From Perna viridis (lineage: Eukaryota), in NCBI GenBank assembly GCA_037379345.1, contig CM074512.1:58859597-58923596 (forward strand): a DNA stretch of 64,000 nucleotides, read 5' to 3'. Under the pieces are notes generated by a model that saw only the letters and a program-made list of their open reading frames with translations, searched no databases and had not been told where the DNA came from. Positions within the stretch are counted from its first letter, which is position 1. Each line of letters begins with the position of its first letter. Both the position numbers and the translations under genes were made by a program. This document shows positions 1,124 through 43,856 of this stretch, piece by piece.

Positions 1124-1174
1124 ACCCCTGTCTTTTTCCATCAACAATAAGTACTTCAGCTGCCACATCGCCAG
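1124..1174 (+). CDS. Receptor exon, Ser/Thr-rich stalk (17 codons)
   Basis: ttgtttacag|ACCCCTGT...CGCCAG|gtaggt; 51 nt, phase 1-1. Confidence 0.55.
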
Positions 1175-7100: not shown

Positions 7101-10100
7101 AAATACCGGTACACGCAGAGATGAAAAGCATAAACCTCTATAAAAAGGGGGATTGATCTCAGGTGCTCAGGAAGGGAGGGCAGTTCCTGCATCTTGCAAG
7201 ACACTTGCCATGCTGTCTGATGATGGTCATATCATGTAAAGATTAGAGGAAGACAATATACATGTATGAGAAATTTACTTCATTCAATAAAATGTTTTTA
7301 AAAAGATCTATTGACAAGCAGTCATAATGTTTTTTTTTTCTAACCTTACAAAGGAGCCAAGTTTGCATTATCTTAGTAGTTATAATTTAATAAGATAATG
7401 TAATATGTTAGTGTTTAAGATAAAACCAGCTGCAGAAATATACCCAGTGGCCAGGATAAACAAATACATACTGAGATGCCAAACTTTTATCCTTTAATCA
7501 ACCATTAGATTAATTTAACATTGAAGCTTTTCTAGTGTGAAGTAGGATTATCTCTCTGGAAAAGTCTTGGCTGATTAATCTAATTAAGCTGAACATTCAT
7601 TACCACATGTGAAAAAGTAATGGAAGTAAAATATGAGTTCAACTCTCAGTGGTACAGATGTATACTTGTTTGATCATCATACTTCATTTTCAAAAATATA
7701 GATCTTTATTTTTAATATGGTAATAGTATTTGGTGACTCTTTTATACGATAAAATATGATTTTTGCCCTGAAAATAGGAAAACTGCAGCCTTGATTAAGA
7801 AAGACAAATCTGTTATTTTATTTGAATGCTCATACAGTTTAAAAGATATTTTATACAATTATGGCATCTTAATTAAGTACTTTTTGTATTACAATTGTTG
7901 TACTGATTGATGATCTATATTGTTTACTATGAGACTAGTATTACCTAGAATGGTCTCAAAGGAGCCTGCTCATTAGGGAAGTCTGAGAAAATTCACCTGT
8001 CTGAAACTCCCTTTTTTCTCACCTTACAGTATTTTGGGAGACCTACAATATATTAATTCTTTCATTTTTATTTTACTATTTTTGGAGCTTGTATGAAAGA
8101 TTTTTTTTTCATTTTTTACTTGTCATATATTTTGCAGATATTTTTACGCTGGTTTTATACAATATAAATCACTCATCATCGATTACTTTCCATATACATG
8201 GTTTTACTTGTAAAGAATTTCCATTTAAATTCTCAGGCATGATCACATATTGCTTTTCTTCCAGAACTCTTGTCTACAACCAGTGAAAAAATCAAGCTAG
8301 TTACTTCTACGTTTACTTCATTGATTACTGGAGTCTCTCTGGATTTTACCACCTCTACTGACAATTCTATTCTGAATGTCACCAAATCTACTCAATTTCT
8401 TCTTAGTAAGGCAGGAATGTTGGAATGGTCTTTTTGTTTCAACTAATGACTAATATCTTCTTTCATATAAATGCTGCTTTCTACTATAACATGTTTTCAT
8501 CATTCATGAGTTTTATTTAAGTCCATTCAAGTGAAGTTTTCCACAAGTTACTTACTTCTTAAGTAAAAGTCTGAATTTGACAGTCTTTGAATTTTACCAC
8601 AAACTTAACAAGCCATGGCAAAAAAATTATAGGCTTGTGAGTTTTGCCTGAAATGAGGATCAACAGGCAACATAAAACAAGATTTCCAAGTTTAATATTT
8701 TCTAGCAGTGTTCGATTCTTTTACTCATTTCTAAAGTTAGTTTTATGATAGGTATGCAAATTTAGAACACTCTGCTTGCCCAAATTCCTTTGTTTTTAGA
8801 GGATACCATGTAACTTTTTATTGGGACATCACAAATATGACACATTTTATATCTCACCTGGCTAAAAAAGGAATATCTTTTTCTCTTTAGTGAGAAAATA
8901 GTGTCTTGTAAACAAAAATTGAAAATTTCAGAACTTGAGTTTTTTCACAATCAGTTACTATACTACCCTTCCTTGTAGTTAAATCATTTAATCACTTCAT
9001 TGAAACTTTCTGGAAATATTTTAGTTCAGTAAAAAAAAACAATTATTAAGCATCAAACTTGTTAATAGCAGTGAGCAGCATATAACATATGGGGTTTTAA
9101 TCTAACATCATCAGCACAACCAGATTTCATCACTATGTCTAATCAAAAGTAATTCTTATGTAATTAACAGTGTTTTCTTTGGACATGGCTGTAGACTTTT
9201 TTGCATGACTAACATGTTTTTTTTTTTTTTTTGGTTTTTAGAATTTCAGGATTTTGTTGATTAAAGACCAACAATCCTTGAAGCTGCTATTTTTTTTTAA
9301 TTTGCACACTTTTATTTATAACCAAACTAATTTCTTCTTTGATTATGGCTGAAATATTGAGTACATTTTATATATGTATTTTTCATGTTTACTACAGGGC
9401 TTTGTTAAGTGAATGTTTTCAGTTTTTTAATTTTATTTTTCATGAACCAATCCACCCTAGTGAACATTACTTTAACAAATCTTGTTACTCATGCACTTAC
9501 ATATAGGAGAAATAATTGAAACATATAAGATAAATGTTTAGTTGAGAATCTTGATTTATTATTAATGTTTTATACAATTGTTCCTCTTACTACTTAGTAT
9601 GTCTATTTTGAACATTTGCCACTTTTTTTTTTAAATAAAAACATTTCATGAAATAATAAAATGGTTATTCAGAGTGCATTCTTTCATTTTTTTCTCAAAA
9701 TGTTAACTTAAGATTTCAATAATTGATCCTCAAACTCAAATTTCTGTCAATTTAATATTTTTCATTACAGATGCTGGCTTCCCTGCATGGTTGATAGGTG
9801 TCATTGCTGTAGTTGTTATTGCTATCATCATCATCATCGTGGTTGTTATTACCTGTATTGTGAGGTCCACAAAGGGAGAAAGGTGGGTTGTATTTACACG
9901 GTTTACTTGTTCTTGTTCAGATTCCAATATACAGGATTGAGAGGAGAAAGATGAATGAACTTTTGTGATTGAAACTAGTAAAATGATAAGGTTGCCCATA
10001 AGCATAAAATGTAAGACTCATAATAAGAATATGTAGTACTTGATGAAAAATGATAGTTCTGGTAAAAAAATCACTAGTTTGCTCTTCAATGTAGGATGAA

Positions 10101-13100
10101 TACAAATTTTGAACACAGGAATTTACATGTTGAAATTCAACATTGCCTAACAGTTCAGGGGTAGTTTAAGAGTTGATGCCACCCCATAAAAGGTTTGTCA
10201 AAAAAATTAGCAGTGTACCAAGATTGCCATAACAGTAGTCTGATCATTTTAAACCTTCAAATCCACTAAAAAGATTTTTAAAGATAGCATTCCTTTGAAG
10301 GTTGTTGCTGGAACTGCTATTGCTTTGGTAAGAAATATGATCTTTTGAGTTTATCATGAATAAAGGCAAGAAAAAAATAATTTTAGTCAAACATTGTCTA
10401 GTTCTGGCTTTCCTTGAAACATTCAGAAATGATTCAACTGGGAAACATCTTTTTTCATCAATTTTATAGCATTAAATACCAGTCAAGTCTAGTTTCAGAA
10501 ATTGTAATTATATAATGAGAATAGCTATGGTGAATATGTCAAAGAGACAACAACTTCACCAGGAAGAAAATGTCGCCCCAAGGCCACCCATTGGTCTTAA
10601 ATGAGCCACAAGGAAACCCTCACACCAGAGGTCAGACTGCAGTTGGCCCCAAAACATCAATATACACAGTTACAGCAAAAGAGTTGCCCCAATGTACTCA
10701 AGTAACATATAAATAAACTTAAAGTGAAAACCAAACAAGATTTACAAAGGCCAGAAATTCCTGACTTAGGACAGGTGCAAAAAATGTGGTGGGGTTAAAG
10801 TACTTGGCATAGTCATGTTTACTTTCTCTGTGAAATCATGGAATAAACAAGTCGAAAATTAGATAGAAATAATTGCATGCTCTCTCTTTCCGAGGATTAG
10901 TCATTGCACTGGGTTTACAGGGAATGTCTGATTAAAAGGAAATTATTTACTCTTTGCTAAATAGAAATAGGGAATTGAATGAACATTACAATTATAAACT
11001 GTCACTGTATTGGAATTGTTGTGATTGTAGATATTTATCCAATATAAGGAAAGTCATTTCCAATTTCATCCAATTCATGTCTGACCAAAGGTAATGATTA
11101 CTGCCATCTGTTGTTTGTCGTAGAGTTTGTCATGTTGGGTTTGGTCTTAGAACATTTATTAGTTTTATAGAATTTAATGTATTAGACATGGTTGATGTAC
11201 TGAGTATATCAGAATGTATTATATAGATGTTAGTTTTGTATCATTAACAGCATGGTAAGAGTGCTTTTATAAAAATTATGTAATATGAAAAATTTACATG
11301 AATATCATTTCATTATCAAAAAACAACAGTTGTTTATTCAAATCATATGGCATTCTGTCAAATTTTCAGTAGAGTGAATTTTCTTACATTTGACCATGAT
11401 TTTTTTTAGTTTTTATGAAAATTTCAGTTATCTGGCAACTGTGAGACGTAAACTCTTCGAACTCACATAGATAGGAATGTTTTAAAGTTTCACCAGAAAG
11501 ATTTGTCTCTCAATAGGCCAGGGTAAGAAGGATTCACAATGGGAGGAAACCTTAATTCTGTACTTAACCCATCTTAACCTTACAATAATTATCTCAACAA
11601 TATATGGAAGGGAAATTATAATGTAAACCCTCACATATAAGTATTTACACATAGTTAGAGATTAATAAATGCCATACAAGGAGGCTATTAAATTGTCCTT
11701 AAAGCCTAATGGGGCTGGACATCGTGTCCACCTGTCACATCAAAATAAAATAACTGACAAAACATGGAGATTTAATCGTACATAGACATAGCATGGCAAT
11801 GTAAAGGTCTTATTTGTGTTTATTGAAGTTTTGATCATTTGTGTTCATTATTTATTTTTAAACCAATAAGAGATTGATATAATTAGTCAGATATACCCTG
11901 GAAACAACTTATGTATTATGTTTGTTCTTTCAATTTGCACCAAAACTGTGATTCTGTGACATTACTGTTTATTTAAGTTATTCAGCATCAAATATTTCAG
12001 TGAATAGACTACTGTATTTCTTCACTGATTTTTTTATTTTGTCTGAAAGTTCCAAAGTATTGCTCCTACTTAAAAAGCATGCAAAAGTATTCTCTGTATT
12101 GTTAAAGTCGCTTTGTCAGGCCATGAGGTATTAATCTGTTGAAGATTATTTTTTAGGTGTTTAAATTTGGCAGGATTGATACTTGTACTCAAAATTTCAT
12201 GGTACATGTATGTTCAACTTAATACTTCTGGTTCAAAACTATGTCTGTTGATTTTACTACAGATTCTGAAGCAGAATTGCATCTGTTAAAAAGATTAAAA
12301 CTTCCATGTTTGACCATGATTCTTAGTTGGAGTGATAGACAGTATCACTTAGTTACAGTCAGACCTATAAAAATATAACTGTCTCATATAATGGCAGCAT
12401 TCTTTGGTTTTATTTGTTAGTGTATGATATAAGTAATTTTTCTTTTAATTTTTAAATTATGTGAACTACCCTATTAAATTCTTCACATTGCTTGAAGTTT
12501 TGAAATATTTTAACAGACTTATTAAAAGTAGTGCACATTATATATGATACAGATGTAGGCTCTGTATATGTTAGATGTGTCTCTTATGCAGTGTCACTAA
12601 TTAGTTACATAATAGTTTTGGTATTGACAACATATGTATGCTACTAAATTAACTATGGAAAAGTATGTTAGTTACCTATATATGAAGCACTTGTATAACC
12701 ATTAGCTAACTTTTGTATTAAATATTTATAATGAGACTGCACTTCTATGTTGAGTATTGTAATTTGCTGTTTGATATTGTATGATCATATATACCACAGA
12801 ATGTATAGGGTTTTTTTTTCTTCACAAAAGTGTATCTTTTATTGTCTTGTAAATTTTTATCATTATTTTTACATAAAATGCTGTAATATTTTCTTTATGA
12901 AAAAGATTAAAACAGGGAGTGTGCTGGCAAATCATAATTTTTTTCACTAAAATGTTATATACTTTCATCAAATTGAACTTTGTTATTCAGTGTAATTTCT
13001 GCATGATGTCAGCAAAACATATACAGAAGCATTAAAAATACAGTCCTGCTTTCCTTGTGAATGTTATAGAATGTTATTTAACCAGAGTCATTTATTGCTA

Positions 13101-16100
13101 CACATTTATATTGTAGAGAAAAATTAAAGAGGTAAATATAAGCACCATATAGTCTAATCTATTGCTTTGTTTAAGTTTCTAGTTGAAATCAGATTTCTGT
13201 ATTTTAATCTGGATTGATTTTGTTTTTCTTTCCATTGACTTCATATGTAAGCTGTTTTATTAATTTTCATTCACTTCATTGGTACTTATGACTACATGTT
13301 AAAAAAGAGAATGACAAAAACTTATTTTATATTCTTCCTATTATAGAAATCTGGTATCAACAAAGCTGTGACCATCTTCTTTCATCATTCCCTCTATATT
13401 ATGTACACACTCACAACTGTATGCTTATCAAACATATCCTATGTCATGTTTTCAAGCAAAATTATTTACTTGTTATCAGCACCCACAGTTCATAAAATTT
13501 AGTTTAAGCAGCACGCCTGTGAGAATAGTTAGTAAAAAAAGTAACAAATAGTGACGGAGTTAGACAAAGAGTAGGCAATAATATATAACCCTTTCCATTT
13601 TCATATTTTTAAAGTTACCGCAACTATAGACTGAATTAAGCAATCGTCAAAGAAATTATTTTACTTGGTCCCTGCTATCAGACCAAGTATTCTTAGATTC
13701 CACTTTCCCCTCACTCGGGGCATGGTCCCTGCTATCAGACCAAGTGTCCTTAGATTCCACTTTCCCCTCACTCGGGGCATGGTCCCTGCTATCAGACCAA
13801 GTGTCCTTAGATTCCACTTTCCCATCACTCGGGGCATGGTCCCTGCTATCAGACCAAGTGTCCTAAGATTCCACTTTCCCCTCACTCGGGGCATGGTCCC
13901 TGCTATCAGACCAAGTGTCCTTAGATTCCACTTTCCCCTCACTCGGGGCATGGTCCCTGCTATCAGACCAAGTGTCCTTAGATTCCACTTTCCCCTCACT
14001 CGGGGCATGATCCCTGCTATCAGACCAAGTGTCCTTAATTCCACTTTCCCATCACTTGGGGCAAGTGTAATTTTTGTTTTAGAAAGTTATTTATTGTGTT
14101 CCACTTTCTCTTTGGCAAGTAGAAAGGTTGAATTTTTGAAGGGATTTGTTAAGTTTGGAAAGCAAAATTTAAATGTCTGTAAATTAGTCTTCATATGAGT
14201 TTTTTTTTTGGAAACCTAAAATTTTGCAAAATCCTAGAACACTATCAGAGAACTGTGGTCAAAGTAATAATATACTTACAGTGAATTCCTGGGAGATGAG
14301 CAATATGTTTGAATTACTGAAGTATATGTTTTTAAATGGTGCTATGAAAGTAATTATTTTTAGAAGTTCCACATCCTGTGGTTTATCACATCTTTTGGTT
14401 TGTGAAATGTAAAATTTGTGGATTTCAAGAAAGCAGTATGACTTTTCACGAAGAAAAATGTTTTTTTAAAAACAGTTTTAAGACATATGCATGGCAATTT
14501 ATTGTTTGCAGCACTGTTTTTGTTTGCAACCATCATTGCGTCCAATGCTTTTTGCCTATTGCTACTAACTACAAAGAATGTAGAATTTTACATGCAGAAA
14601 TAATTCCCATGTTTAAATTGAAAAGATTGCCCTTTTCAATATATGTAGAACTAGTTAAAATTTGGCTTCCCTTGGTCTAAAGGGAATGTAATTGTTTTCT
14701 GTAAAAAGTGATTAATTCCATCAATCAGTTAAAATGGAAATAAGAAATTAGACTTTTATAAATAATTCTTACAGCAATGATTTTTACTGGTTATATGTTG
14801 TATCAGCATTTTGCCTGTTTTCAAATTTTAAAGTTGAATTTAGAAGTGTTAATCACCACCCCAATGGCAGATCCTTAGCTTTACAAACAGGGATCCTAAC
14901 CCAGGGGCCAAAATTTTTCCTTAAGATTTGTTAAAAAAGAGCATTATAATTACTTAAAATTTATAGTAAAATGCTAAATAACAAGTTTGCTTGATTATTT
15001 GTTAAATTGTTTTGTTTTCTGATCATATTTTTTTATGTTTTATAGTATAGATGTATTTAATTTTATATTTGGGCTTAGGGATCTGCCCATAAAAACGTTG
15101 GCTAATTTGGTTTATCCGGATGTAAGGCAGGCAAAAATTTACATACAAAATCAAATTTCAACAAAAAGCATCAAGCCAATATACAAAATGTTGATGATTG
15201 AGATCACTTAATGAGAACTTAATTTGATTAGGTATTAACATCATTAGATCTTGTAGTGCTAATCTAATATTCTGCTTCAGTAATTTTTTGATGTAGAATA
15301 CTATATATATAATCAACAGGAAGTAGTACTGGTGATGATTAGTGTCAGGCAGAGAAACCAATCAAATTTAAATAAATGTATGTGGAGAAGGTTTGCTTTT
15401 TTCACTGGTTACCCTCAAAGTTCACAAGATTTTTTATATGATCATGAATAATTGTGATCATACAATGGTATCACACTGTTGTCGTCTGTAGGATATCATG
15501 ACAATAACTTGACTCTGCCAAGAACGCATTAAGATTTTATTCATGCGTGGAACAAGTTCCACACACTTGTTAAATGTAGGCATTCTTTGCCACTCATGAT
15601 CATATTTTGGCTATTCACAATAACCAATAGATAATCCTATTAGTACAATATTTCACTGTGAAATAAAACTTTTGATCATCATTTCTGAAAGTATATTATA
15701 TTATTTGGCCTTAAATAGGCCTTAATGACCCTACCACATTTGTTCAATCTGTCACATCTCTGCCTGACAATAATAATAACCTGTACTTAATCCAGTTTGA
15801 ACCATTATATTTATGTATGTAATTGAACTCATAAACCATACACCATGGAATATAATTATATACTATATAAATGCATGACCTCCCAATTACCTCATTATAA
15901 CCCTTGTTGTATGTCCTTCATTCCTGATTGTCTTCATTATGTTTGACTTCAGGTTATGTAAGTATAATACATCTTTTAAAATAAGATATGAATGAATTTT
16001 CTTTAGTAAGTTACATATAGTAAAACAGCCCTTCCTTTGATATAAATTTCCCATGTATATTAAATGTAATTTTATTGGGACATGTACATATGTCACAGGG

Positions 16101-19100
16101 AATTGTAACTAAAATGGAAAATTGTTTGCCTATCTGTACCTTCCTTAAAATATTTGGCTAATATTTAACTTGGCCTGTAAGTAGCAGTCTTTATAAATAT
16201 CAGACAGTAGGTGATTCGTGCATGTCAAAAAACGAAAAACAAAAATACCTTTATTATTTAAGAAACAGTTAAATACGTCATGACCAGTCCTTCTTTGTCT
16301 TTCCACTATTGCATTTTTGAGATAATAATAAACATGAAATTTTCACTTTACAAGAGTTGTCATTCTTGATTTGGGAAGGGGTGAATTTATGGTTTTATTC
16401 TTTCAGTACAGATATGAATGCAGAAAGGATTGTAGTCAAGGAAAAATATGACATATGTTACTTGTAAAAAACTTCATTTGTTCTGTGGGTATTTTGCAGG
16501 ATGAATCACCTCTACCATTGGCAGTGTATGAAATTTATATAGACTGATACTTAGATGGTTACACATGTTTTACTGATAAATATTGAAATAGTGAGAAAAA
16601 ATATTTTGAAACAATAAATTGTCAATTCTATTCATATGTACCAGAATAGGAATCTTAATCCTTTTTGTAGGTCCAAAATTTCCAAGTGGCTTTCTACACA
16701 TTTGCAAGGTCTTGGGAGATGTAGAAAATATTTCAAGTCTCCAACTAGGTCATCAACCAAAAATTGCCGAGACATTCCCAAAATATCCCTACCAGACATC
16801 ATACAGGAACCACAGACACCATGTTCTGCTGGTTCTCCACTGACAGACAGGGAACCAGTTGACTTCTGCAGGGGACCAGATGCTTGTATTAAGGAGCCTG
16901 ATGAGTTCAGTCTTAAGTTGAATCTCACAAGTGACACTTTCTCTGAGGAAATATTCAAGGAATTGAATCAAAGTTCAGGAGAGTATGAGAACACTGGAAA
17001 TTATTGTGAGCTAACAAGTAATCCATACCATTCCAATTCAAACCACTATGAAAATTATGCAGACCATAGACCCACAGTAGATAACCAGAAAGTTGTCATT
17101 TATGTTAATACTTCTGATATTCATAGTGGAAAGGGAAATAACTCTAGCACAGCAAATGGTTATCAACCAACTACTGGTCAACATAGAGTGAAAGCAAGAA
17201 CTTTAGGAAATGAAGATTTGACTATGAAATTAAGGAATTTAGATGTATCTAATGATGATATTGTACTGTTTGATAAAGACTCAGTACAAAGTCTGACAGT
17301 TGACAGTGGCTATGCATCCAGACAAGTTTCAAATGATAATTGTACTTGCTAATATATACTTACATTTAAGTGTATCGAGCAGAAGTGATTCACTGAATTT
17401 TATGCTTTAACAAATTACTATGCTATGCTATGTAAACAATTATAGAGATTGTGAAATGAGATGTTTTATTATATGACCTGCAGTGAAAAAAAATTTTAAA
17501 CTGTGCCAAGAACTGACAAGGTATTATTTTAAAGACTTCATATATTTCTTTGTTTTCCTTGGGTTCCCTGTGATATTAAATTTTTCTGATGGCAATGAAA
17601 TCCTTATAGAACAACAAAGTTTTACCAAGGAAAATTGATAGTTCTTCCAAAACAAGTCTTTCTTTGATTGAAATGATTATGCAATTTTTTTTATAGTTTA
17701 CTTTTTTTTACTTTAGTTTAAACAGACATTTGTAAAGTCGGTTGCATTGTATTCTATTGCTTTGGTATAATTAATTTTATGGAAAATAATTTTTTTTTTT
17801 TATTTCCTGCTTATTTTTATATTACCCCTTTTGAGACCATATTGTGTTTTTTTGTATTTTTTATTACCAAGTTTTTTGTAATTCTGTGTTTTTTAATCAA
17901 GCATAAAATTTGTACATTAAACAAAATTTATGTGTTAAAGACAAATTTTAATGCAGACAATTTTTTTTATTTGTAATTTCACAAAAAAGTCTTGCTAATT
18001 ATCATGTTCAATTATATGTTTATATTCCTTAAAAACTTAATTGAACTTAAAATTTCATCATACACATAGTATGGTTTGCTAATTAGTTTCTTTTTGTGTC
18101 AATGAATAGCTTTAGATGTTATCTTATGTTAGCACTTGTACAGAATGTAGTAGTTTTTGTTGGAGATTAGTAGTTGATAGAATATTTTTATTGTGACAAG
18201 TCTGTGTTAGCTGATTTACTTGTAAAAGGACAACAGATCTATGTTGAGCTACCTACCTCTATGAGTTCAAGATTTTTTTTTCATATATTATTTTATATTC
18301 CTGGTCATATTGACCCATTTATCACATTTAAGGAAACCACTTATGAATCAGATATGAAAACTAGCTTTATCATGTATTGATAGCAAAGGGAAATAACTAA
18401 AAAAATATAATTGAATTTTTTTTTTTTTTTTACTTAAGTGTAAGTGTTTGTAAGAATCAGGCAAAATGGAAAACCAGAAACATGCATGTCAAAAACCCTC
18501 AGACCTGACAACGTAATATCACTGAATGATACTTTATCTATTTGAAAATAACACTATTTAATCTCTGCATCACTGGCTTTGCTCAGAAATTTTTCAATAG
18601 AATGTTAGAAAAATGATATTTTTGACAGAGTTATCTGCCCCTGAAATGTTCATTTTCAGTGCATTTCAATGAAATTGTAACTCAATGATCCAGCATGATA
18701 TGGAAAATCTTGTCTGTTTTCCTTGATTCTGATGGTGCAAATAGTCAAATTATATTATCAAAATGATGGTTTTTTTCATACCATGTTTCACCCACTGCCT
18801 GATTCTTAGAGGGACTGACACTTAATTTTGTTTAAGCAAGGATTGTTAAGCTTCAGGATATGGGTTTCTATGTTTCTGTGGCAACCAAATAAGAAATGTT
18901 AATATTCTAATTTAATTTGCCCAGATATTTCAATTTTTGTACCAGAAACACAAATTGATACCCTCTGAAAAGTTGTGTGTTTGTCTGTCCCGTGATGATT
19001 TTCAGATGACTTGAAAAGATATAGAAGGATCTTTATCAAACTTTGTATAGTTATTAGAATCATAAAATACAAATCAAGTTAAAATTTCAATTTGATCAGA

Positions 19101-22100
19101 TTATTTACACAAAAGGTATTGCCATTTACACTCCAAAAATTTTTTTTGCATTGTAGCAAGGCATCATTTAATGTCCCATTAGATGCCATATGTTTTTATC
19201 TTATGAAAGGTTGTGTTTGGTCATCAGTTAGTGAAATTAAATGGTATTCGGTGAAAGAATTTTTTCTTGGGTATTTTTAGTAATTGTACAACAATATGAA
19301 AAGGTATTAAAAGTGATCTAAAAAAAAATTATAATATACTTTTACAATACAGAATTTTGGGTAAAAATGTATTACTTACCATTTTAGTGCTTTATTATGT
19401 TGTGTTCAGTGTTGTATATTTTCCATTCTTTATTTATGTTGTTATTTTAAGGTTGTAAATGTCATTTTTGTCATTATTTAATTTCTTTAATGGTGCTTAT
19501 ATTTTTTGCAATATTATTTTGTAACTTGTTTTGTTTTCATTAATTATTTTTGCAACATTTTTTATAAATGAGTTACTGTATTAAGCCTTTTGATGAGCTA
19601 CCTTTATTTCTTATATAATATTTTCAACAGCTTTTTTACAAGGAGACCTGTATTTTAAATTGTCAAAGATAAATGTGTTTAGTATAAACATTTGAGTTGA
19701 CAGTAAAAACTTTTTCTTCCATTAGCTCATTTAATTGCTATTATAAATCAAGTGAAGAAATAACAACTTTTTTGTATCCAGAATTTTGATCTAGGAGCAA
19801 TCTGTAGATTTCAGTATTAATGTCTGATGAATTTGGTTGACCAGCTGGAACTGTTTATTGTATTGATATTTTTTATTCTTACCAAAGAGGACATAACACA
19901 ATTGACTGCAAGATCTTGATATTACATTTTCAGCAAAATTACATGTATAAATTTTGAAAATGGGTTATTCCCCTATATCTGAAATCACCTGTGTTATAAA
20001 AAAAACCTGAAGATTAGGCCAAGATTCTCATCCCCTCCTAACCCAATTTTTTCACCCTCCTCGAAAAAAATTATTTTAATTTTTTACCCAGTTTAGGTTA
20101 ATTTCTTTCAAATTAAGCATTTTTAACTAGAATTGATAAAAAAATAAAGAATAAAATTTGCTCGCCTACCCCTAATTCTGAAAAATGTTAGATGAGAATC
20201 TAGGAATTTGTTTATGATGGCCTTATTAAAGTAGTCTACAAGTAATGTGCTATTGGTGTTATCGAGAAGAACCTGTATAATAAAGAAAAATCTCAAAGTA
20301 ACTACGATTGTCTAAACGGAGTGAAACTCACAAGTTAAACAAATGTAGTATAGATACTCTTGTTTGCAAAACTGCCATTCCCACAATGCATTTTTTTTGG
20401 TAATGGTTCATTTACTCAAAGATGTGTTCATAATTGGTGATTCAAAGAAAGATTTTTTTAATGAAAACTTTACTTTAGAAGTTGTGATACAGTAGCTGCC
20501 TTATGTCTGAATTTTTTCATGTTGCACAAATAAATGTTATCACAGTGGAATGTGTTTCAGCTTATTTTCCTTGAATGAATTACACCATTACAATGCTGTG
20601 GATAAGGGCAATAGCATTGATTACATTTATTACAGTGGGACATTGTATACATTGGGACATGGTGTGGCCTTTTCTGGTTTTAGTTCTAGTTGCTAGTAGA
20701 GAACTGTGAAATATGCGTAGTTTACTGACAGTTACATATTTGCTGAAAAGTGATTGGCCTACTTCTAATTTGACACTAAAAATTTGTGAATAATAAACGT
20801 GCTTTTCTTTATGGGTATAATTTGTTAAGGTTAGAGAAGTTTAGAATTTGTATATGGTGGGAATATTTACATTTGGAGAGTTAATGCTCTTTTTGTAATA
20901 TGAAAATCACAACATTTAGCGGGTAGTACAGATTTTTCTTTCAAATGTATGGTACTTATTTGTCTTTCTATACAGTTCTGGTCTGCATTTATCATCAAAG
21001 CTTGTGAACTCCAAAATAAAATCATAGACTGAAGTCTTCAAAGTCGCTAATCGTTAAATATTCCCTGTCACTGATTTTGGCTTCCTTTCAACATCTGAAA
21101 TGTACAAATGTGACATGCTCTAAAATCTAAAATCTAAAACTTCCACTGAAATCTTGGTTCCCTTGATATGATTGCATACTCTTTCATAACCATGATGACC
21201 CGAATGTTTTCAATCATCAGGAACAAGATTGAACAACTGACAGTGGCTATATATAGATACCGGGGTCCTGACAATATATATGACCTTTGTATAGTCAATT
21301 GTAACGAACCCCTTTGTTTGAATTTGAAACTGGGTAATATTACATAAATTCAATGCTAACCGATCATTTTATCTTTTAATGTTAACTTTCTAATACAAGC
21401 ATGCATAGACATGTGTATGATATGTTTTAAATGAGGTACCTCGTAACAATCTTTGGGTCACTTTTGATATTGACCAGGCAACCAGTTTAGGAATCAAATT
21501 AAGCAACTGGCAATGAATGTGACTATATGACCTTTGTAGTCCAGTAACAAGCCCCAGTGCCTGAATCAGAAACTGGGTAATATACAAAGCTAACTGATCA
21601 TTTCTGTAAACTTCCATTCTCGTACAAGCAAGAAACACAGGCAGAACACAAGTGTATGATACTCAAGAGATACATTTTTATCTCATATGAAGTTAGAACT
21701 ATGACTCTCTGGTGGTAAACGCAGTGAGGATCTACAGCATTACTTGATGTATAATTACATATTTATGCAAATCATATGCCAATATTAAGTACTGAAATTA
21801 CGAGTGCATGAAGTAGTTAACAATATTAGTGACTTAGAAATGACAATGTTTAGGTTACAAGTATATACATACATTTTTGTATATGGTTAACATTAATGAA
21901 TTTTCACATTTGGATTATGGGTATTTATTGGTTCAAATCTATTGGTAGTATTTGGTCAGAGGTAATCATGTAAAAAAATCACTATTTGTAAAGAATTACC
22001 AACTCAATCTTGAAATAACTGTTAATTTTCAAAAGTTTGGACATGATTGGTATGTATAGATGTGTTCCCACACTTATACACACACCCCATTTGAGAGAAT

Positions 22101-23695
22101 AAATGGGATAACTTTATTGTCATAATTTTGAAAAGTATTTGAAAAAATATCTGCTTCAACTCTTGATCTTTTAAAACTTTGACTCATTGACCCTTTTGTC
22201 CTTTTGAAACTTTGACTCATTGACCCTTTTGTCCTTTTGAAACTTTGACTCATTGACCCTTTTAAGTCCTACCCCTGCTTACAATACTTAAAGTTGATTA
22301 TCTCACTTGGCAAAAACCTGAAATACAATGAAAATGGATATAGTGAATATTTCAAAGAGACAACAAACTTACCGGGATAAAAAAAAATGTAAAATTACTC
22401 CAGCTCATGTAAAAGTTTCATAAAAATTCATTGAATAGTTAATGATGAAGTTGCACTTACAACTTTTGCAAAACCTTTATGTTTGATTGCCTCCATTTGC
22501 AAGCATCCAACATTAATATTCTTGCTCTATGCACATTTACACTGTCATGATGCCTCATTTCATCAGCATCCATTGAATGGTTAAGGTGCTTCCAAGGTAC
22601 ATGATCTGATGGACAAACAGACCGGCATGCAAAAATTTCTATATACTACTGCACTTGTTTTGCCTAGGTGTAATAAATTTTCTTAAAACCAGGATTTAAG
22701 TTTAAAGTAACTATCAATATCATATAATCAGGTTCTGAGTTATAGATGGATTTTAAATACATTGTAAAATGAAGTTAACACCTCTTTTGAGAGAAGATCA
22801 CGACATATTTTTTGTACTTAAAATATGTTTATGTTCTGAACATTTTAGACCTGAAAGAAGAGCAGACTATGTGTTGAGTGATTACCATCGAGTGAATTAT
22901 CTCCACAACAAACTGGACAAAGGTGAAAAACACAAACGTAGAAAGAAGAAGAGGGCAAGCAATGGGAATGCAGGCAATAACAATATTGAAGATGGCATAC
23001 AAACAAATACAGAATCTAATATCTCAACTGTTGCAGGAACTTATGAAGGTCAAACAAAACCAGCAAGGTCATCAGGCTATGATGAATTATCTAAGTGTTT
23101 CTCAGGACAGTCAAATTCAGCAAGTTGTGTCACAGAATCTGAAACAAATGGACATGTTGTGACAGGTAGAGAATCAGGTGGATTTACATTTAATTCAAAA
23201 GCAGATGTCTATCCAAATCCCGAATCCACCTCATCTGATACTCGAAATTCAAGAATTTACACACCAACTATTTTGGATGGAGAACCTGATGAAAACTCGG
23301 ATGTCTTTTTCCTATCACATAAAGGCTCTGTTAAGGAAAGTCCATATGCAGTATCAAAAATACTTCCTAATGTGCCTGTAGATCAGACTGATGACATTGA
23401 TCTGCCCCCACCAGCTCCCCATGGCATGTATTTAAATCATCAGTTTGAAAAACTTGGAGGATTTCAGAACCATTCATTCATCAGTGACAATGAGCATAAG
23501 AGTAAACCCTTGCCTCCAAATCCTTTTCCTAATTTGAAATCCCACATATCCTTCCTTGGAGCTAATCTGTTTGATAATGCTGATACTATTATTGAAGGAG
23601 GATTGTATAAGAAAAATAAACAAAAACCTGTCCCTAAGAAGAGACAAAAAATTAAAGTGGAGGATGAAGATAGTGATGACACTATAGAAATTTAG
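1124..23695 (+). CDS. Single-pass type I membrane receptor-like gene, 3' part (5' exons upstream of window). Exons 1124-1174, 8265-8405, 9771-9882, then terminal exon 16671-17352 or 22849-23695
   Basis: All junctions are GT-AG and phase-compatible (1/1, 1/1, 1/2, 2). Spliced peptide: (D)PCLFPSTISTSAATSPELLSTTSEKIKLVTSTFTSLITGVSLDFTTSTDNSILNVTKSTQFLLNAGFPAWLIGVIAVVVIAIIIIIVVVITCIVRSTKGER + tail. Family not identifiable without the ectodomain. Confidence 0.65.
2036..3999 (-). mobile_element. 5'-truncated non-LTR retrotransposon (L1/Tx1-type)
   Basis: Perfect 16-bp TSD ctttttattagaagtt at 2020-2035 and 4000-4015; A-rich tail (poly-T on +, 2036-2060); RT C-terminal half plus CCHC knuckle. Confidence 0.92.
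2304..3998 (-). CDS. LINE ORF2 C-terminal fragment (RT motif QFADDT, zf-RVT CTFC-x8-HLFWNC); no native start
   Basis: ORF 2304-3896 stays open up to the truncation point: INGLHITQIEHKLSQFADDTSLILDG; also SGLNINFSKT, GGLKMINL, CTFCNVEPETIEHLFWNC. Confidence 0.88.
   Translation of the reverse strand: MNGLHITQIEHKLSQFADDTSLILDGTEKSLQESLLELDWFAGISGLNINFSKTQVIWIGSKRYCEDILCKNKNLTWGETSFKLLGLNFDVDLDRMIKLNYDERLVQIKNLINQWSKRNLTVIGKITVVKTLILPVLNHLIISLPNPSSDIIKKINDMIFTFIWNSPISRVKKDVLQKEYQDGGLKMINLFSFITALKTTWIRRAFQNNSKWLSIFMSSLDSEKLFNCGDGYVQNVQKNLKNKFWKDVLNSWAMVLEKEKHVDWEFFLANPVWYNKLIKIGGETVFYKDWFVNGVHYINDLINDDGSYLSLEQLQHKYGININFMKYNSIMSAVKHAAKAFYVGNCKLQRPFIPSFLQTILRSKKGSRDMYKVLNQNDSTPKGQLKWTEVLDNDSLNWKKIFVLPFTVTNNTKLQWLQYRINHRIIATNKFLFKINVINDSACTFCNVEPETIEHLFWNCEFVQNVISEIDNWFLIHGISIPLTKLNFIFGNTSYTSKGEPYNIIILNIKQYIYNTRCFKQMLSLTALKEKLKYMYKIEKMLSVKNKRVELFNKKWQQFQNVLT
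4292..4630 (+). mobile_element. Helentron-associated (HINE/DINE-like) non-autonomous repeat fragment
   Basis: T-run, then hairpin agctca-tctggccataggcca-tgtgagct; body 4370-4570 is homologous to 6290-6470; classification is from recalled bivalve repeats. Confidence 0.55.
4649..6250 (-). mobile_element. Penelope-like retroelement fragment (Naiad-type, RT at C-terminus), 5'-truncated, with 3' tail
   Basis: RT motifs NNIVFVCK, YWIPKLHK, TYDFSTLYT, GIPMGTNCAPLLADLFL, FRYIDD, KRDDFSFRIVNFP; no GIY-YIG after the RT; tail shared with solo copies. Confidence 0.8.
4864..6250 (-). CDS. Penelope-like reverse transcriptase (N-terminally truncated)
   Basis: Uninterrupted ~460-aa RT part of ORF 4864-6411; the first ~53 aa of that ORF come from the neighbouring repeat. 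Confidence 0.82.
6251..6480 (+). repeat. Second partial copy of the HINE-like repeat, abutting the truncated RT
   Basis: tcttctcctctgacactactcgaccaa...ggggatttttgatc...aaaaacatggct matches 4380-4500. Confidence 0.6.
7125..7215 (-). repeat. Solo copy of the structured Penelope-like 3' motif
   Basis: aggtgctcaggaagggagggcagttcctgc aligns with 4830-4859; a partial, oppositely oriented copy lies at 4256-4296. Confidence 0.65.
8265..8405 (+). CDS. Receptor exon, mucin-like Ser/Thr-rich stalk with N-glycosylation sequon NVT
   Basis: ttttcttccag|AACTC...CTTCTTA|gtaagg; 141 nt, phase 1-1, open frame. Confidence 0.65.
9771..9882 (+). CDS. Receptor transmembrane exon
   Basis: ttcattacag|ATGCTGGC...GGAGAAAG|gtgggt; encodes WLIGVIAVVVIAIIIIIVVVITCIV followed by basic RSTK. 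Confidence 0.8.
10515..10800. repeat. Dispersed repeat beginning tgaatatgtcaaagagacaacaac
   Basis: The same motif recurs at ~22343-22368 and ~48400-48425. Confidence 0.55.
13666..14062. repeat. Minisatellite, 57-bp unit x ~7, highly homogeneous
   Basis: Unit ggtccctgctatcagaccaagtgtccttagattccactttcccctcactcggggcat; it explains ORFs 13661-14044 and 13665-14198. Confidence 0.97.
14864..15090. mobile_element. Degenerate MITE-like element
   Basis: Inverted ends ggcagatcc ... ggatctgcc; related remnant at ~25650-25802. Confidence 0.4.
16671..17352 (+). CDS. Receptor terminal exon A (226-aa cytoplasmic tail)
   Basis: ctttttgtag|G TCC AAA; AG|G=Arg joins the TM exon in frame; inside ORF 16636-17352; YENT, YENY, YVNT and DSGYAS motifs. 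Confidence 0.7.
18440..18825. mobile_element. Non-autonomous element with subterminal inverted repeats (taagaatcaggca/tgcctgattctta), copy 1
   Basis: Both ends match, in reverse orientation, the ends of 40078-40348. Confidence 0.6.
20014..20225. mobile_element. MITE-like remnant
   Basis: taggcc...ggcctta ends plus internal inverted pair agattctcatc / gatgagaatct. Confidence 0.45.
22174..22263. repeat. Tandem repeat, 33-bp unit x ~2.7
   Basis: aactttgactcattgacccttttgtccttttga. Confidence 0.9.
22849..23695 (+). CDS. Receptor terminal exon B (281-aa alternative cytoplasmic tail)
   Basis: cattttag|A CCT GAA; AG|A=Arg joins the TM exon in frame; inside ORF 22769-23695; polybasic patch, SGYDEL, KPLPPNP, C-terminal IEI. 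Confidence 0.65.
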
Positions 23696-43573: not shown

Positions 43574-43856
43574 TCAATTCAAATGGAAACCTTTTTCAGC
43601 AGTGGCTGCTAAAAGTTTTTCCCGGAGAATATCCTCTGAGGAATATTCTGGCAGTTTGAGATAATGAACACATGTGTTGACTGAAGGAAAGCTAGTATCA
43701 TTTCCGTCAACTTTCCTCACAATCGTTAGTCTTGGATGTAAGTTTGCGAGGCCACCTGGTGGCAGAGATGAACAGCCAGTTGTGAACTGTAGGAAAGCTT
43801 TTTTCTCATCTGGACTTAAACTGGTCACCACATTTACAAACCTTTGGAACCCAGGG
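43574..43856 (-). CDS. HECTD1: HECTD1 last coding exon (catalytic Cys in NTCVHYL)
   Basis: ORF 43574-43873; AG acceptor at 43857-8. Confidence 0.93.

What the first reader, a model, noticed from the sequence alone, without database searches (positions are those of the whole stretch)
9771..23695. One receptor TM exon, two unrelated alternative cytoplasmic tails (candidate signalling switch)
Seen: the TM exon ends in phase 2 (AG|gt, 9882). Two large stop-containing exons 6 kb apart both start with a phase-2 acceptor that completes Arg (16671, 22849). Because exon A carries a stop, they can only be alternative last exons. Tail A has three YxN motifs (YENT, YENY, YVNT), YCEL and DSGYAS. Tail B has KHKRRKKKR, SGYDEL, YPN/YLN, PPPAP, KPLPPNP, PKKRQK and C-terminal IEI. 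Established: pYxN binds Grb2-type SH2 domains, S/I/V/LxYxxL is the ITIM consensus, K/RxLPPxP is a class I SH3 ligand, and Phi-x-Phi-COOH is a class II PDZ ligand. Inference: one ectodomain could be wired to an activating, rapidly degraded output or to a scaffolded/inhibitory output by alternative last-exon choice.
Basis: partly seen in the sequence, partly recalled or inferred. Interest (0 to 1): 0.75.

Follow-up and report, generated by a model that had tools for sequence, protein, structure and literature searches.

The report
Mussel membrane protein with two tails
A small membrane protein gene, found so far only in mussels, can end in either of two unrelated disordered inner tails by choosing between two last exons; this kind of switch is well known, and what this one does is unknown.

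Summary
The TM exon (9771-9882) ends in phase 2. Exon A (16671-17352) and exon B (22849-23695) both open with an AG acceptor that completes Arg, and both end in a stop. All listed motifs are present.

The alternative-last-exon reading is supported, mainly by orthologues. In three Mytilus species one annotated gene gives isoforms with the same ectodomain and TM segment joined to tail A or to tail B.

In this genome, contigs of RNA-like runs cover exon A and run on for 3.2 kb to an AATAAA at 20529. One contig leaves the genome exactly at the exon B acceptor. No junction partner could be read.

The ectodomain is short, about 70 residues with 5 Cys and one N-x-S site, plus an optional Ser/Thr stalk exon. 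Both tails are predicted disordered and are single-copy. Homologues were found only in mussels.

The "activating versus inhibitory" wiring is mostly unsupported:
- Tail A's three YxN motifs are absent in Mytilus.
- Tail B's ending IEI, YPN and the ITIM −2 residue are not conserved.

Conserved motifs are DSGYAS in tail A, and [ST]DYxRV, YD[ED]L, MYxN, PPPAP and KPLPPNPF in tail B.

Verdict: a real gene, already annotated automatically in Mytilus, and a new member of a known kind.

The parts
1124..1174 (+). Ectodomain exon 2: 51 nt, phase 1 to 1, D-PCLFPSTISTSAATSP, carrying the fifth conserved Cys. Ectodomain exon 1 lies outside the window, 747-588 nt upstream of base 1 (L003 9253-9412). It reads VMSSDFCDGYICGELLGPPPIPPVDLLPRIECHDIISECNAVSSLKGAYSNYS.
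   Evidence: tblastn with Mytilus proteins: exon 1 scores E = 4.5e-16 to 7.5e-15 at 56-60% identity. Exon 2 is weak on its own (E = 0.6-3), but it has the right order, phase and canonical AG/GT sites.
8265..8405 (+). Optional Ser/Thr-rich stalk cassette: 141 nt, phase 1 to 1, with a conserved NVTKS glycosylation sequon.
   Evidence: tblastn against the Mytilus cassette EKTTRTT...NVTKSPQSLFY gives E = 0.007-0.017. Splice sites are cttttcttccag| and |gtaagg. It is optional in Mytilus: present in P0004, P0006, P0013, P0019 and P0020, absent in P0003, P0007, P0010, P0011 and P0012. Its use in this species was not tested.
9771..9882 (+). Transmembrane exon: 112 nt, phase 1 to 2. It has a hydrophobic core of about 25 residues, a conserved Cys at the inner border and a basic stop-transfer stretch RSTKGE(R).
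   Evidence: It is 64% identical over 39 residues to Mytilus, E = 1.6e-13.
11031..11090 (+). Candidate optional juxtamembrane cassette: 60 nt, phase 2 to 2, R-YLSNIRKVISNFIQFMSDQ, ending in AG like the TM exon.
   Evidence: It is the best of 122 AG...GT/GC, stop-free, phase-compatible candidates between 9890 and 16660 when scored against the Mytilus cassette (local BLOSUM62 score 35; the next independent locus scores 23). Splice sites are ttgtgattgtag| and |gtaatg. No transcript evidence was seen.
13117..13131 (+). Weak candidate 15-nt micro-exon: R-EKLK, phase 2 to 2, ending in AG. It would be the counterpart of Mytilus RLQIK.
   Evidence: Good splice sites (tttatattgtag| and |gtaaat), but the similarity score is not distinctive: 10, tied among 79 candidates. 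Only indirect support comes from the 19-letter overhang of three contigs, which is an inference.
16671..17352 (+). Tail A coding part of the proximal terminal exon: 226 codons plus TAA.
   Evidence: Homologues appear: 8 proteins among 66 candidates, with Mytilus at 31-35% identity and a close relative, P0002, at 76%. Contigs of 4 of 4 RNA-like runs cover 17000-17399. It is single-copy in G000. The AlphaFold model has mean pLDDT 29.7.
17353..20545 (+). Inferred 3' UTR of the tail-A isoform, about 3.2 kb. It contains an interspersed repeat at about 18440-18820 and an AATAAA at 20529-20534.
   Evidence: Contigs of RNA-like runs tile 17000-20545 at similar depth. They end at 20543 (X1) and 20545 (X2), 9-11 nt after the AATAAA. 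All four runs have zero depth at 20600-20799. Contigs cannot prove an RNA end.
22849..23695 (+). Tail B coding part of the distal terminal exon: 281 codons plus TAG.
   Evidence: Homologues appear: 7 proteins among 507 candidates, with Mytilus at 54-55% identity. A 135-nt contig of X13 fits 22847-22954, and its other 27 letters do not fit the genome upstream. A contig of X1 lies on 22882-22999. It is single-copy in G000. The AlphaFold model has mean pLDDT 49.3.

Best explanation
This is the orthologue of an uncharacterised mussel gene (Mytilus LOC143067639, LOC127698230 and LOC134712454).

**The protein.** It is a single-pass, N-out membrane glycoprotein. Its ectodomain is about 70 residues long, with five conserved Cys, a GPPPIPP stretch and one conserved N-x-S site.

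**The gene.** It is built from exons that fit together in any combination:
- an optional Ser/Thr stalk cassette (phase 1-1);
- a TM exon that ends in AG (phase 2);
- up to two optional juxtamembrane mini-exons (phase 2-2, each also ending in AG);
- two mutually exclusive terminal exons.

**The tail choice.** Splicing to 16671 gives tail A. That exon ends after a UTR of about 3.2 kb, at a poly(A) signal near 20529. Skipping the whole exon and splicing to 22849 gives tail B. The choice is therefore a competition between splicing plus cleavage at the proximal exon and splicing to the distal one.

**The tails.** Both are unrelated, intrinsically disordered strings of short linear motifs.
- Inferred, about 0.3: tail B is the better conserved tail. 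It may act as a phosphotyrosine, polyproline and NPF docking or endocytic platform, in the manner of vertebrate transmembrane adaptor proteins.
- Inferred, about 0.3: tail A evolves faster. It carries an invariant C-terminal block QSLTVDSGYASRQVSxDNC[TS]C whose DSGYAS fits a beta-TrCP-type phosphodegron, which would couple that isoform to regulated turnover.

**Shown:** the exons, their phases, orthology, the isoform models in Mytilus, and coverage of both exons by RNA-like contigs. **Not shown:** junction letters in this species, or any biochemical function.
For: - Exon anatomy and phases.
- Same gene, both tails, in three Mytilus species by the sources' own gene and isoform names. Of 11 Mytilus proteins read, 7 carry tail A and 4 carry tail B, and all 11 share the TM segment.
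- Upstream exons are found in the right order and phase.
- RNA-like runs: 14 runs of 5 studies hold 0.34-0.52 of the words of 16600-23900.
- Four of four runs laid cover the 3' part of exon A and run on to 20545, beside the AATAAA at 20529. They then drop to zero. There is almost nothing in 22000-22800, with coverage again at exon B.
- The X13 contig departs from the genome at 22847. That is the acceptor 22849 plus the 2-nt AG that every candidate upstream exon ends in.
- None of the 15 joints listed enters 22849 from inside 17000-22848.
- The tails are unrelated, single-copy and predicted disordered.
- Motif conservation.
Against: - No read or contig letters across 9882>16671 or 9882>22849 were seen in this species. 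The one read-laying run could not hold the donor and an acceptor together.
- 17 joints and 179 loose ends were not listed.
- The runs are labelled RNA only by a guess, and contigs cannot show RNA ends or levels.
- The only 100%-identical database proteins (P0001/P0016 and P0009/P0017) are ORFs that read through both acceptors from the intron, so they come from unspliced contigs.
- The Mytilus isoforms are automatic predictions. I could not see the RNA support behind them.
- The functional part rests on short motifs. No Pfam family passes its cut-off, and nothing outside the query set was found with the tail-B profile.
Confidence: 0.8

Rival explanations
1. One reading: tail A is an activating, Grb2-coupled and rapidly degraded output, and tail B is an inhibitory (ITIM) and PDZ/SH3-scaffolded output.
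For: - All motifs are present.
- Tail A has 3 YxN against 0.75 expected (P = 0.03), and they are kept in the close relative P0002.
- DSGYAS is invariant in 6 of 6 sequences.
- Tail B keeps [ST]DY[HN]RV in 4 of 4 sequences that cover it, and KPLPPNP in 5 of 5.
Against: - 0 of 3 tail-A YxN motifs exist in 4 Mytilus sequences.
- IEI is not kept as Phi-x-Phi in 0 of 4 others.
- The −2 Ser of SGYDEL is P, P, A and A elsewhere.
- YPN lies in a species-specific insertion.
- The one conserved YxN, MY[LA]N, is in tail B, the supposedly inhibitory tail.
- No kinase, SH2 or PDZ partner is known.
Confidence: 0.12
2. In this species only one tail is really joined to the TM exon. The other junction exists only in automatic Mytilus models, or as rare and unproductive splicing.
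For: No junction letters were seen here. The database ORFs for both exons are unspliced read-throughs.
Against: - Both ORFs are intact, single-copy and conserved from this species to Mytilus, with canonical phase-matched acceptors.
- Both are covered by RNA-like contigs.
- One contig leaves the genome at the exon B acceptor.
- Three Mytilus annotations agree independently.
Confidence: 0.07
3. Exon A is a stop-carrying internal cassette of the CD46 exon-13 type. It would be spliced onward to exon B, which then serves as 3' UTR. Under this reading there are not two true terminal exons.
For: In CD46 a cassette exon gives CYT-1 and skipping it gives CYT-2 (abstract of PMC5064401, seen in the listing).
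Against: - Contigs continue collinearly from the tail-A stop for 3.2 kb to an AATAAA and then stop.
- No listed joint runs from exon A to 22849, among the 15 of 32 joints that were shown.
- Such an mRNA would carry a stop far upstream of its last junction.
Confidence: 0.04
4. One of the tail exons is transcribed on its own from an intronic start and is not part of the membrane protein in this species.
For: - Three contigs from three runs all begin exactly 19 letters before exon A.
- Logan contigs exist that carry at least 35 nt of intron in front of exon A and at least 81 nt in front of exon B (P0001, P0009).
Against: - Exon A has no Met before residue 184, and exon B has none before residue 193. 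A stand-alone transcript would therefore not encode the conserved parts.
- The Mytilus models join both exons to the TM exon.
- The X13 contig is not collinear with the genome upstream of exon B.
Confidence: 0.03

Closest known systems
Mytilus 'uncharacterized protein' genes: LOC143067639 (M. galloprovincialis), LOC127698230 (M. californianus), LOC134712454 (M. trossulus) and the M. edulis counterpart. All are automatic NCBI annotation.
   Same: They are orthologues. They share the ectodomain (56-60% identity), the TM exon (64%), tail A (31-35%) and tail B (54-55%). They also show the same optional stalk and juxtamembrane cassettes and the same either/or use of the two tails.
   Different: - At the junction to tail B, Mytilus has Ser where this species has Arg.
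- Tail A of this species carries three YxN motifs and an extra acidic insertion.
- Tail B of this species has an insertion of about 25 residues with YPN, and a longer acidic end finishing in IEI.
- Four of five M. galloprovincialis tail-A sequences duplicate the DSGY block.
- No paper names these genes (0 papers).
CD46 (membrane cofactor protein): BC/C and CYT-1/CYT-2 isoforms.
   Same: It is one type I membrane glycoprotein gene. Optional Ser/Thr-rich stalk exons combine with two alternative cytoplasmic tails to give a small set of functionally different isoforms (abstract of PMC5064401, seen in the listing).
   Different: - There is no sequence or domain relationship. This protein has no complement-control repeats, and Pfam finds nothing.
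- CD46 switches tails by including or skipping an internal exon.
- The CD46 tails are short (recalled); here they are 226 and 281 residues.
- Here the proximal exon seems to carry its own 3' UTR and poly(A) signal.
Vertebrate transmembrane adaptor proteins (SIT, TRIM, LIME, LAT, NTAL, PAG).
   Same: They have a short ectodomain, one TM helix and a long tail that serves only as a string of tyrosine-based docking motifs. SIT and TRIM are disulfide-linked dimers, and SIT is glycosylated (starts of the abstracts of PMC2193021, PMC2212462 and PMC2194117, seen in the listing). Here there is an odd number (5) of conserved ectodomain Cys, a conserved N-x-S site and eight conserved Tyr in tail B.
   Different: - No homology is detectable. 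In the ESM Atlas, LIME1 scores 0.79 and the best hit 0.87, all under the 0.9 lead level.
- No alternative-tail switch is known to me in that group (recalled).
- No tyrosine phosphorylation is shown here.
Cytokine-receptor tails with a DSGxxS beta-TrCP phosphodegron (IFNAR1, prolactin receptor, growth hormone receptor). Recalled, not from a call.
   Same: A DSG-Phi-x-S motif in a disordered receptor tail. Here DSGYAS is invariant in 6 of 6 sequences.
   Different: Here the motif sits 15 residues from the C-terminus, inside a 21-residue invariant block that ends in C-x-C. That suggests a larger or different binding site. Binding was not tested.

Membership tests
Alternative-last-exon gene architecture | One upstream donor and two downstream acceptors in the same phase, each opening a long ORF that ends in a stop. 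| tested here: met
   The donor at 9882 leaves AG. The acceptors at 16671 and 22849 both complete Arg. The ORFs are 226 and 281 codons.
Alternative-last-exon gene architecture | Each terminal exon has its own 3' UTR and poly(A) site. | tested here: inconclusive
   - Exon A: contigs run to 20543/20545, next to the AATAAA at 20529, and depth is then zero. Contigs cannot prove an RNA end.
- Exon B: only ATTAAA at 24049 and 24294 were seen in the sequence. No reads were laid there.
Alternative-last-exon gene architecture | Transcripts join the shared exon to either terminal exon, never to both. | tested here: inconclusive
   Met in the orthologues: 7 tail-A and 4 tail-B Mytilus proteins, none with both. 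In this species the exon B acceptor is used (X13 contig), but no partner letters were shown.
MAP17 / PDZK1IP1 (Pfam PF15807) | Score at or above Pfam's gathering cut-off of 29.6 bits. | tested here: not met
   P0010 scores 26.8 bits over the TM region, P0003 scores 13.6 bits, and the two window tails give no hit. The precomputed PF15807 label on P0010 is below the threshold.
ITIM-bearing inhibitory receptors | A conserved [S/I/V/L]xYxx[I/V/L] in the cytoplasmic tail (consensus recalled). | tested here: inconclusive
   Tail B has SDYHRV and SGYDEL.
- The first is [ST]DY[HN]RV in 4 of 4 sequences. Mytilus has Thr at −2, which is the switch-motif form.
- The second has P, P, A and A at −2 in the 4 others, so only YD[ED]L is kept.
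ITIM-bearing inhibitory receptors | Tyrosine phosphorylation and recruitment of an SHP-type or SHIP-type phosphatase. | not testable with these tools
   This needs biochemistry.
Transmembrane adaptor proteins (LAT, SIT, LIME type) | A short ectodomain, a single TM helix and a tail of conserved tyrosine motifs without a folded domain. | tested here: met
   - The ectodomain is about 70 residues, or about 117 with the stalk.
- Tail B has eight conserved Tyr: six invariant in the rows that cover them, and two (in RIYTP and LYKK) shifted or conservatively changed in some rows.
- Tail pLDDT values are 29.7 and 49.3.

This is a likeness in build, not homology.
Transmembrane adaptor proteins (LAT, SIT, LIME type) | Detectable sequence relationship to a known member. 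| tested here: not met
   Pfam finds none. The Atlas gives LIME1 0.79 and a best hit of 0.87. The exhaustive profile search found 3 hits, all from the query set.
beta-TrCP phosphodegron substrates | A DSG-Phi-x-S motif in a disordered region, conserved (consensus recalled). | tested here: met
   DSGYAS is invariant in 6 of 6 tail-A sequences. One such motif is seen against 0.01 expected in shuffles. The region is modelled with low confidence.
beta-TrCP phosphodegron substrates | Phosphorylation-dependent binding to beta-TrCP, and ubiquitin-dependent turnover. | not testable with these tools
   This needs biochemistry.

The most novel reading that the evidence does not exclude
A gene family confined to mussels encodes a modular transmembrane adaptor. 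Its exons all share splice phase, so stalk, juxtamembrane and tail modules can combine into up to 16 isoforms if both mini-exons are real. Cells would toggle one small ectodomain between two outputs by poly(A)-site and last-exon choice: a turnover-coupled tail with a DSGYAS degron, and a phosphotyrosine, SH3 and EH docking tail. This would be an invertebrate counterpart of the CD46 CYT-1/CYT-2 rheostat that arose independently.
Probability: 0.15. Interest if true: 0.55.

Novelty: new member of a known kind. Interest (0 to 1): 0.3.

Why it matters
Alternative cytoplasmic tails on one ectodomain are a well-known way to diversify signalling, so the principle is not new. The isoforms are also already present in automatic Mytilus annotation.

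What this work adds:
- a checked gene model in a second mussel lineage;
- evidence that the two-tail design and the cassette logic are conserved across that distance;
- a conservation filter that separates the few motifs worth testing from the species-specific ones on which the proposed wiring rested. The motifs worth testing are DSGYAS with the C-x-C end in tail A, and [ST]DYxRV, YD[ED]L, MYxN, PPPAP and KPLPPNPF in tail B.

The gene is a lineage-restricted orphan, and it could interest people who work on bivalve immunity or cell signalling. It does not open a long-standing question.

Tried and rejected
- **Pfam.** Four Mytilus isoforms and both window tails gave nothing at or above a curated cut-off. 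MAP17 reached 26.8 bits against the 29.6 cut-off and lies on the TM region, so I rejected it as a family.
- **ESM Atlas with P0010.** The best score was 0.87. The hits were only generic single-pass proteins, so I treat this as a likeness in build and nothing more.
- **Exhaustive profile search with tail B (A1) against 1.84 billion representatives.** It gave 3 hits, all from the query set, so no wider family was found.
- **Ectodomain search, P0013 residues 1-135.** It gave 10 of 96 candidates, all Mytilus.
- **Two scans of JGI metagenome contigs, with A1 and with P0015.** Pattern matches numbered 594 and 85, but no relative was found. Gene order in a third lineage therefore could not be checked.
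- **Signal-peptide exon.** No convincing candidate was found in L002 or L003. The first exon of this species is not located.
- **Structure models of both tails.** Mean pLDDT was 29.7 and 49.3, so I ran no fold search because it would be meaningless. The alignments held only 6 and 5 rows, so low confidence is weak evidence for disorder.
- **Rfam on 9000-24500.** No family reached its threshold.
- **Literature.** (bivalve / alternative last exon / cytoplasmic tail) listed 15 of 32 papers and none was relevant. One search (the three LOC names) found 0 papers. Supplements were not opened, so a gene list in a supplement could name these loci.
- **Joined model.** I did not search a joined, spliced protein model. 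All searches were exon by exon or used database proteins.
- **Contig overhangs.** Three exon-A contigs carry 19 letters in front of 16671. That equals the 15-nt candidate micro-exon plus the 4-nt suffix AAAG shared by the TM exon and the 60-nt cassette. The exon-B contig carries 29 letters in front of 22849. That is what a 31-letter word graph gives if the upstream exon is also followed by other exons that start with A. This is arithmetic on contig lengths. The word length of 31 is partly recalled, and the letters were never seen, so I do not count it as proof.
Full report
**1. The observation**

The window is AT-rich (33% GC), has no N, and looks like animal DNA with introns. The exon coordinates, phases and stops are as follows.
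- The exon at 9771-9882 sits between ...cattacag and gtgggt. It encodes AGFPAWLIGVIAVVVIAIIIIIVVVITCIVRSTKGE and leaves the two bases AG.
- At 16671 the site tcctttttgtag|G completes Arg and opens a 226-codon ORF. It closes with TAA at 17350-17352.
- At 22849 the site tgaacattttag|A also completes Arg and opens a 281-codon ORF. It closes with TAG at 23693-23695.

The two tails are unrelated, with a best BLASTP E-value of 14.

**2. What the gene is**

Exon-by-exon protein searches found the orthologue.
- Tail A hit 8 proteins among 66 candidates.
- Tail B hit 7 proteins among 507 candidates.

Apart from the window's own unspliced ORFs and a few unnamed Logan or JGI fragments, all hits are "uncharacterized protein" isoforms of Mytilus. 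The sequences show one common N-terminal part: an optional signal peptide, an ectodomain DFCNGCTEL(V)GPPPIPPPEFLPQD.CHDIISTCQ...SNFS..CLHTVTVSTAA and the TM segment AGFPAWLIGVI...KGE. This part is followed by either tail A or tail B.

| Species and gene | Tail A isoforms | Tail B isoforms |
|---|---|---|
| M. galloprovincialis LOC143067639 | X7, X11 | X9 |
| M. californianus LOC127698230 | X2 | X3 |
| M. edulis | X12 | X2 |

The gene and isoform names are the sources' own. Of the 11 Mytilus proteins I read, 7 carry tail A and 4 carry tail B. None carries both, and all share the TM segment.

The proteins also differ by three optional pieces:
- a 47-residue Ser/Thr stalk;
- a 17-18-residue juxtamembrane piece, RC(K/LL)NLRKVFSIQFLTEK;
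- a 5-residue piece, RLQIK.

**3. The gene model in this genome**

With the Mytilus proteins as tblastn queries against the window and 30 kb upstream, and by reading the splice sites, the model is as follows.

| Exon | Coordinates | Phase | Evidence or note |
|---|---|---|---|
| Ectodomain exon 1 | L003 9253-9412 (747-588 nt upstream of window base 1) | ends in phase 1 | 56-60% identity, E about 1e-15 |
| Ectodomain exon 2 | 1124-1174 | 1 to 1 | weak match, right order and phase |
| Optional stalk cassette | 8265-8405 | 1 to 1 | E = 0.007; conserved NVTKS |
| TM exon | 9771-9882 | 1 to 2 | 64% identity |
| Candidate 60-nt cassette | 11031-11090 | 2 to 2 | RYLSNIRKVISNFIQFMSDQ; best of 122 candidates |
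| Weak candidate 15-nt exon | 13117-13131 | 2 to 2 | REKLK |
| Exon A | from 16671 | enters in phase 2 | tail A |
| Exon B | from 22849 | enters in phase 2 | tail B |

Every cytoplasmic exon ends in AG and leaves phase 2, so any of them can be joined to any later one.

I could not locate a signal-peptide exon. Reverse-transcriptase-like ORFs on the minus strand (2307-6426) lie in the intron between ectodomain exon 2 and the stalk cassette.

Each tail is single-copy in the 723-Mb assembly at the sensitivity.

**4. Transcript evidence in this species**

The look-up of sequencing runs listed 24 runs.
- 14 runs from 5 studies are labelled "RNA?" by a guess. They hold 0.34-0.52 of the sampled words of 16600-23900.
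- Their contig totals are 62-105 million letters, against 658-934 million for the three runs that hold 0.80-0.88 and look like DNA.

I laid four runs from four studies on 17000-22999. All are Logan contigs, so depth and ends must be read with care.

*Exon A and its downstream stretch.*
- Contigs cover the 3' part of exon A in 4 of 4 runs. Together with further contigs of similar depth (about 5-15) they tile on to 20543 (X1) and 20545 (X2).
- An AATAAA lies at 20529-20534.
- All four runs have zero depth at 20600-20799 and at 22000-22199, and almost none in 22200-22800. The exception is one 200-nt contig of depth 2.8 in X4.
- This pattern fits a terminal exon A with a 3' UTR of about 3.2 kb. 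It fits less well with retention of the whole A-B interval.

*Exon B.*
- Exon B is covered again in X1 (22882-22999+) and X13.
- The X13 contig is 135 nt long. It fits 22847-22954 with 108 letters, and its remaining 27 letters do not fit the genome upstream. The contig leaves the genome at the predicted acceptor. The 2-nt shift is what one expects if the upstream exon ends in AG.

*Limits.*
- None of the 15 joints listed enters 22849 from within the stretch. All lie in repeats. 17 joints were not listed.
- The partner letters were not among the 24 of 203 loose ends shown.
- The stretch could not hold the TM donor, because 9882 to 16671 spans 6790 nt and the limit was 6000.

In this species the use of both exons and of the exon B acceptor is therefore supported, but the junction partners are inferred from orthology.

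*An inference I do not count as proof.* Three exon-A contigs from three runs all carry exactly 19 letters before 16671. The exon-B contig carries 29 letters before 22849. These are the numbers a 31-letter word graph would give under two conditions:
- exon A is mostly preceded by the 15-nt exon, which is itself preceded by either the TM exon or the 60-nt cassette; the two share the suffix AAAG, so 15 + 4 = 19;
- exon B is preceded by a long exon that is also followed by other exons starting with A.

*Evidence against.* The only database proteins identical to the tails (P0001/P0016 and P0009/P0017) start in the intron. They come from unspliced contigs.

**5. Nature of the protein**

- No Pfam family passes its cut-off. 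MAP17 scores 26.8 bits against 29.6, on the TM region only.
- A profile of tail B, read against 1.84 billion representative proteins, found only the three clusters it was built from.
- The ectodomain search found only Mytilus.
- The ESM Atlas gave nothing at or above 0.9. The nearest hits are generic single-pass proteins with disordered tails, LIME1 among them at 0.79.
- AlphaFold models of the tails have mean pLDDT of 29.7 (tail A) and 49.3 (tail B). The only longer element is a juxtamembrane helix in tail B, residues 10-31. The alignments are shallow, so this is weak but consistent evidence for disorder.

From the sequence, the build is:
- a small glycosylated ectodomain with five conserved Cys and a conserved N-[FY]-S site;
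- a TM helix with a conserved Cys at its inner border;
- a basic stop-transfer stretch;
- one of two motif-rich disordered tails.

An odd number of Cys would allow a disulfide-linked dimer. That is speculation.

**6.

*Tail A* (6 sequences: the window, a 76%-identical relative and 4 Mytilus).

| Motif | Result |
|---|---|
| YENT, YENY, YVNT | kept in the close relative (3 of 3); absent in Mytilus (0 of 3) |
| NYC[ED][LF] | N-Y-C invariant |
| QSLTVDSGYASRQVS.DNC[TS]C at the C-terminus | invariant |
| LPDIIQEPQ[ST]P, [IV]FKE[LI], EDL..KL..L.VS..DIVL.D | conserved |

*Tail B* (5 sequences).

| Motif | Result |
|---|---|
| PERRADYVL[ST]DY[HN]RVNYLHNK | conserved in the 4 sequences that cover it |
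| The basic cluster | conserved |
| YD[ED]LSKC | conserved |
| RIYTPTI | kept in 3 of 5 as aligned (shifted in Mytilus) |
| KESPYA[VI]S..LPNVP | conserved |
| PPPAPH.MY[LA]NHQFEKL | conserved |
| KPLPPNPFP.L[KR]SH (this holds an NPF as well as a +xxPxxP) | conserved |
| [LM]YKK.K.KP[VI]PKKR | conserved |
| YPN | not conserved; lies in an insertion |
| The −2 Ser of SGYDEL | not conserved |
| The last three residues (IEI here; EEC, SSL, NIF, NIF elsewhere) | not conserved |

The motif-to-partner rules are recalled textbook knowledge and were tested by no call. They are: pYxN with Grb2 SH2, the ITIM and ITSM consensus, +xxPxxP with SH3, NPF with EH domains, and DSG-Phi-x-S with beta-TrCP.

**7. 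How it most likely works**

*Shown or well supported:* one promoter-proximal part (ectodomain plus TM) is joined to tail A or to tail B. Exon A is the proximal terminal exon with its own long UTR and poly(A) signal. Using exon B requires skipping exon A's acceptor and surviving its poly(A) site. The switch is therefore a competition between splicing and cleavage at exon A and splicing to exon B.

*Inferred, about 0.3 each:*
- Tail B is the conserved "business" tail: 54-55% identity to Mytilus, against 31-35% for tail A. It would act as a docking and endocytic platform.
- Tail A's invariant end is a regulated-turnover or trafficking signal.

"Activating versus inhibitory" is not supported.

**8. 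Comparison and novelty**

- The closest thing in databases is the Mytilus orthologue itself. It is annotated automatically with both tail types, and no paper in the library names it.
- The closest known system in logic is CD46, which has optional Ser/Thr stalk exons and CYT-1/CYT-2 tails (abstract of PMC5064401 in the listing). CD46 uses an internal cassette and is unrelated in sequence.
- The closest in build are the vertebrate transmembrane adaptors SIT, TRIM and LIME (abstract starts in the listing). No homology to them was found.

I rate this as a new member of a known kind and as of modest interest.

That is the same kind of architecture in a different gene.

Noticed in passing
window 18440-18820: An interspersed repeat of about 380 bp lies inside the inferred 3' UTR of exon A. 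The first look at the genome gave 4385 candidates, and 40 of 40 scored copies are full-length at 89-91% identity on many contigs. Contig depth in the RNA-like runs reaches thousands there. The element type was not determined, and Rfam finds nothing.
   Followed up: partly
window 13666-14063: A tandem array of a 57-nt unit, 7.0 copies at 97% matches, lies in the intron between the TM exon and exon A. It reads as long repeat ORFs on both strands.
   Followed up: no
window 2307-4013 and 4867-6426, minus strand: Two long ORFs (569 and 520 aa) with reverse-transcriptase-like sequence lie in the intron between ectodomain exon 2 and the stalk cassette. This was not tested here.
   Followed up: no
window 17788: In 3 of 4 runs (X1, X4, X13) a contig fits from 17788 onward but carries the same 30 other letters before it; the loose part is 255+ letters long. 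It could be a structural variant, an allele with an insertion, or a repeat boundary in the UTR of exon A. It is unexplained.
   Followed up: no
P0003, P0005, P0007, P0019 (M. galloprovincialis tail A): A 17-residue tandem duplication repeats the block ...QSLTVDSGY, giving DSGYVL followed by DSGYAS. It is absent from M. edulis, M. trossulus, M. californianus and the window species.
   Followed up: no
window 30929-39944, plus strand: Four very long ORFs (243, 277, 1261 and 970 aa) rich in Ser, Asp, Glu and Lys lie downstream of exon B. They are the subject of another note (s1-775702). The Mytilus tail-B models end at the tail-B stop, so I treat this as a separate gene. This was not tested.
   Followed up: no
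window 43577-63727, minus strand: A run of exons reads by eye like a large HECT-type ubiquitin ligase. It has a C-terminal HECT-like end at 43577-43879 and a MIB/HERC2-like piece at 54596-54919. It was not searched.
   Followed up: no
L004 5380-6762 and 7263-7481; L002 23-262 (upstream of the window): A separate upstream gene on the plus strand has a 461-aa Lys/Ser-rich ORF and a piece that looks SANT/Myb-like by eye. It bounds the region where the first exon of the tail gene must lie.
   Followed up: no
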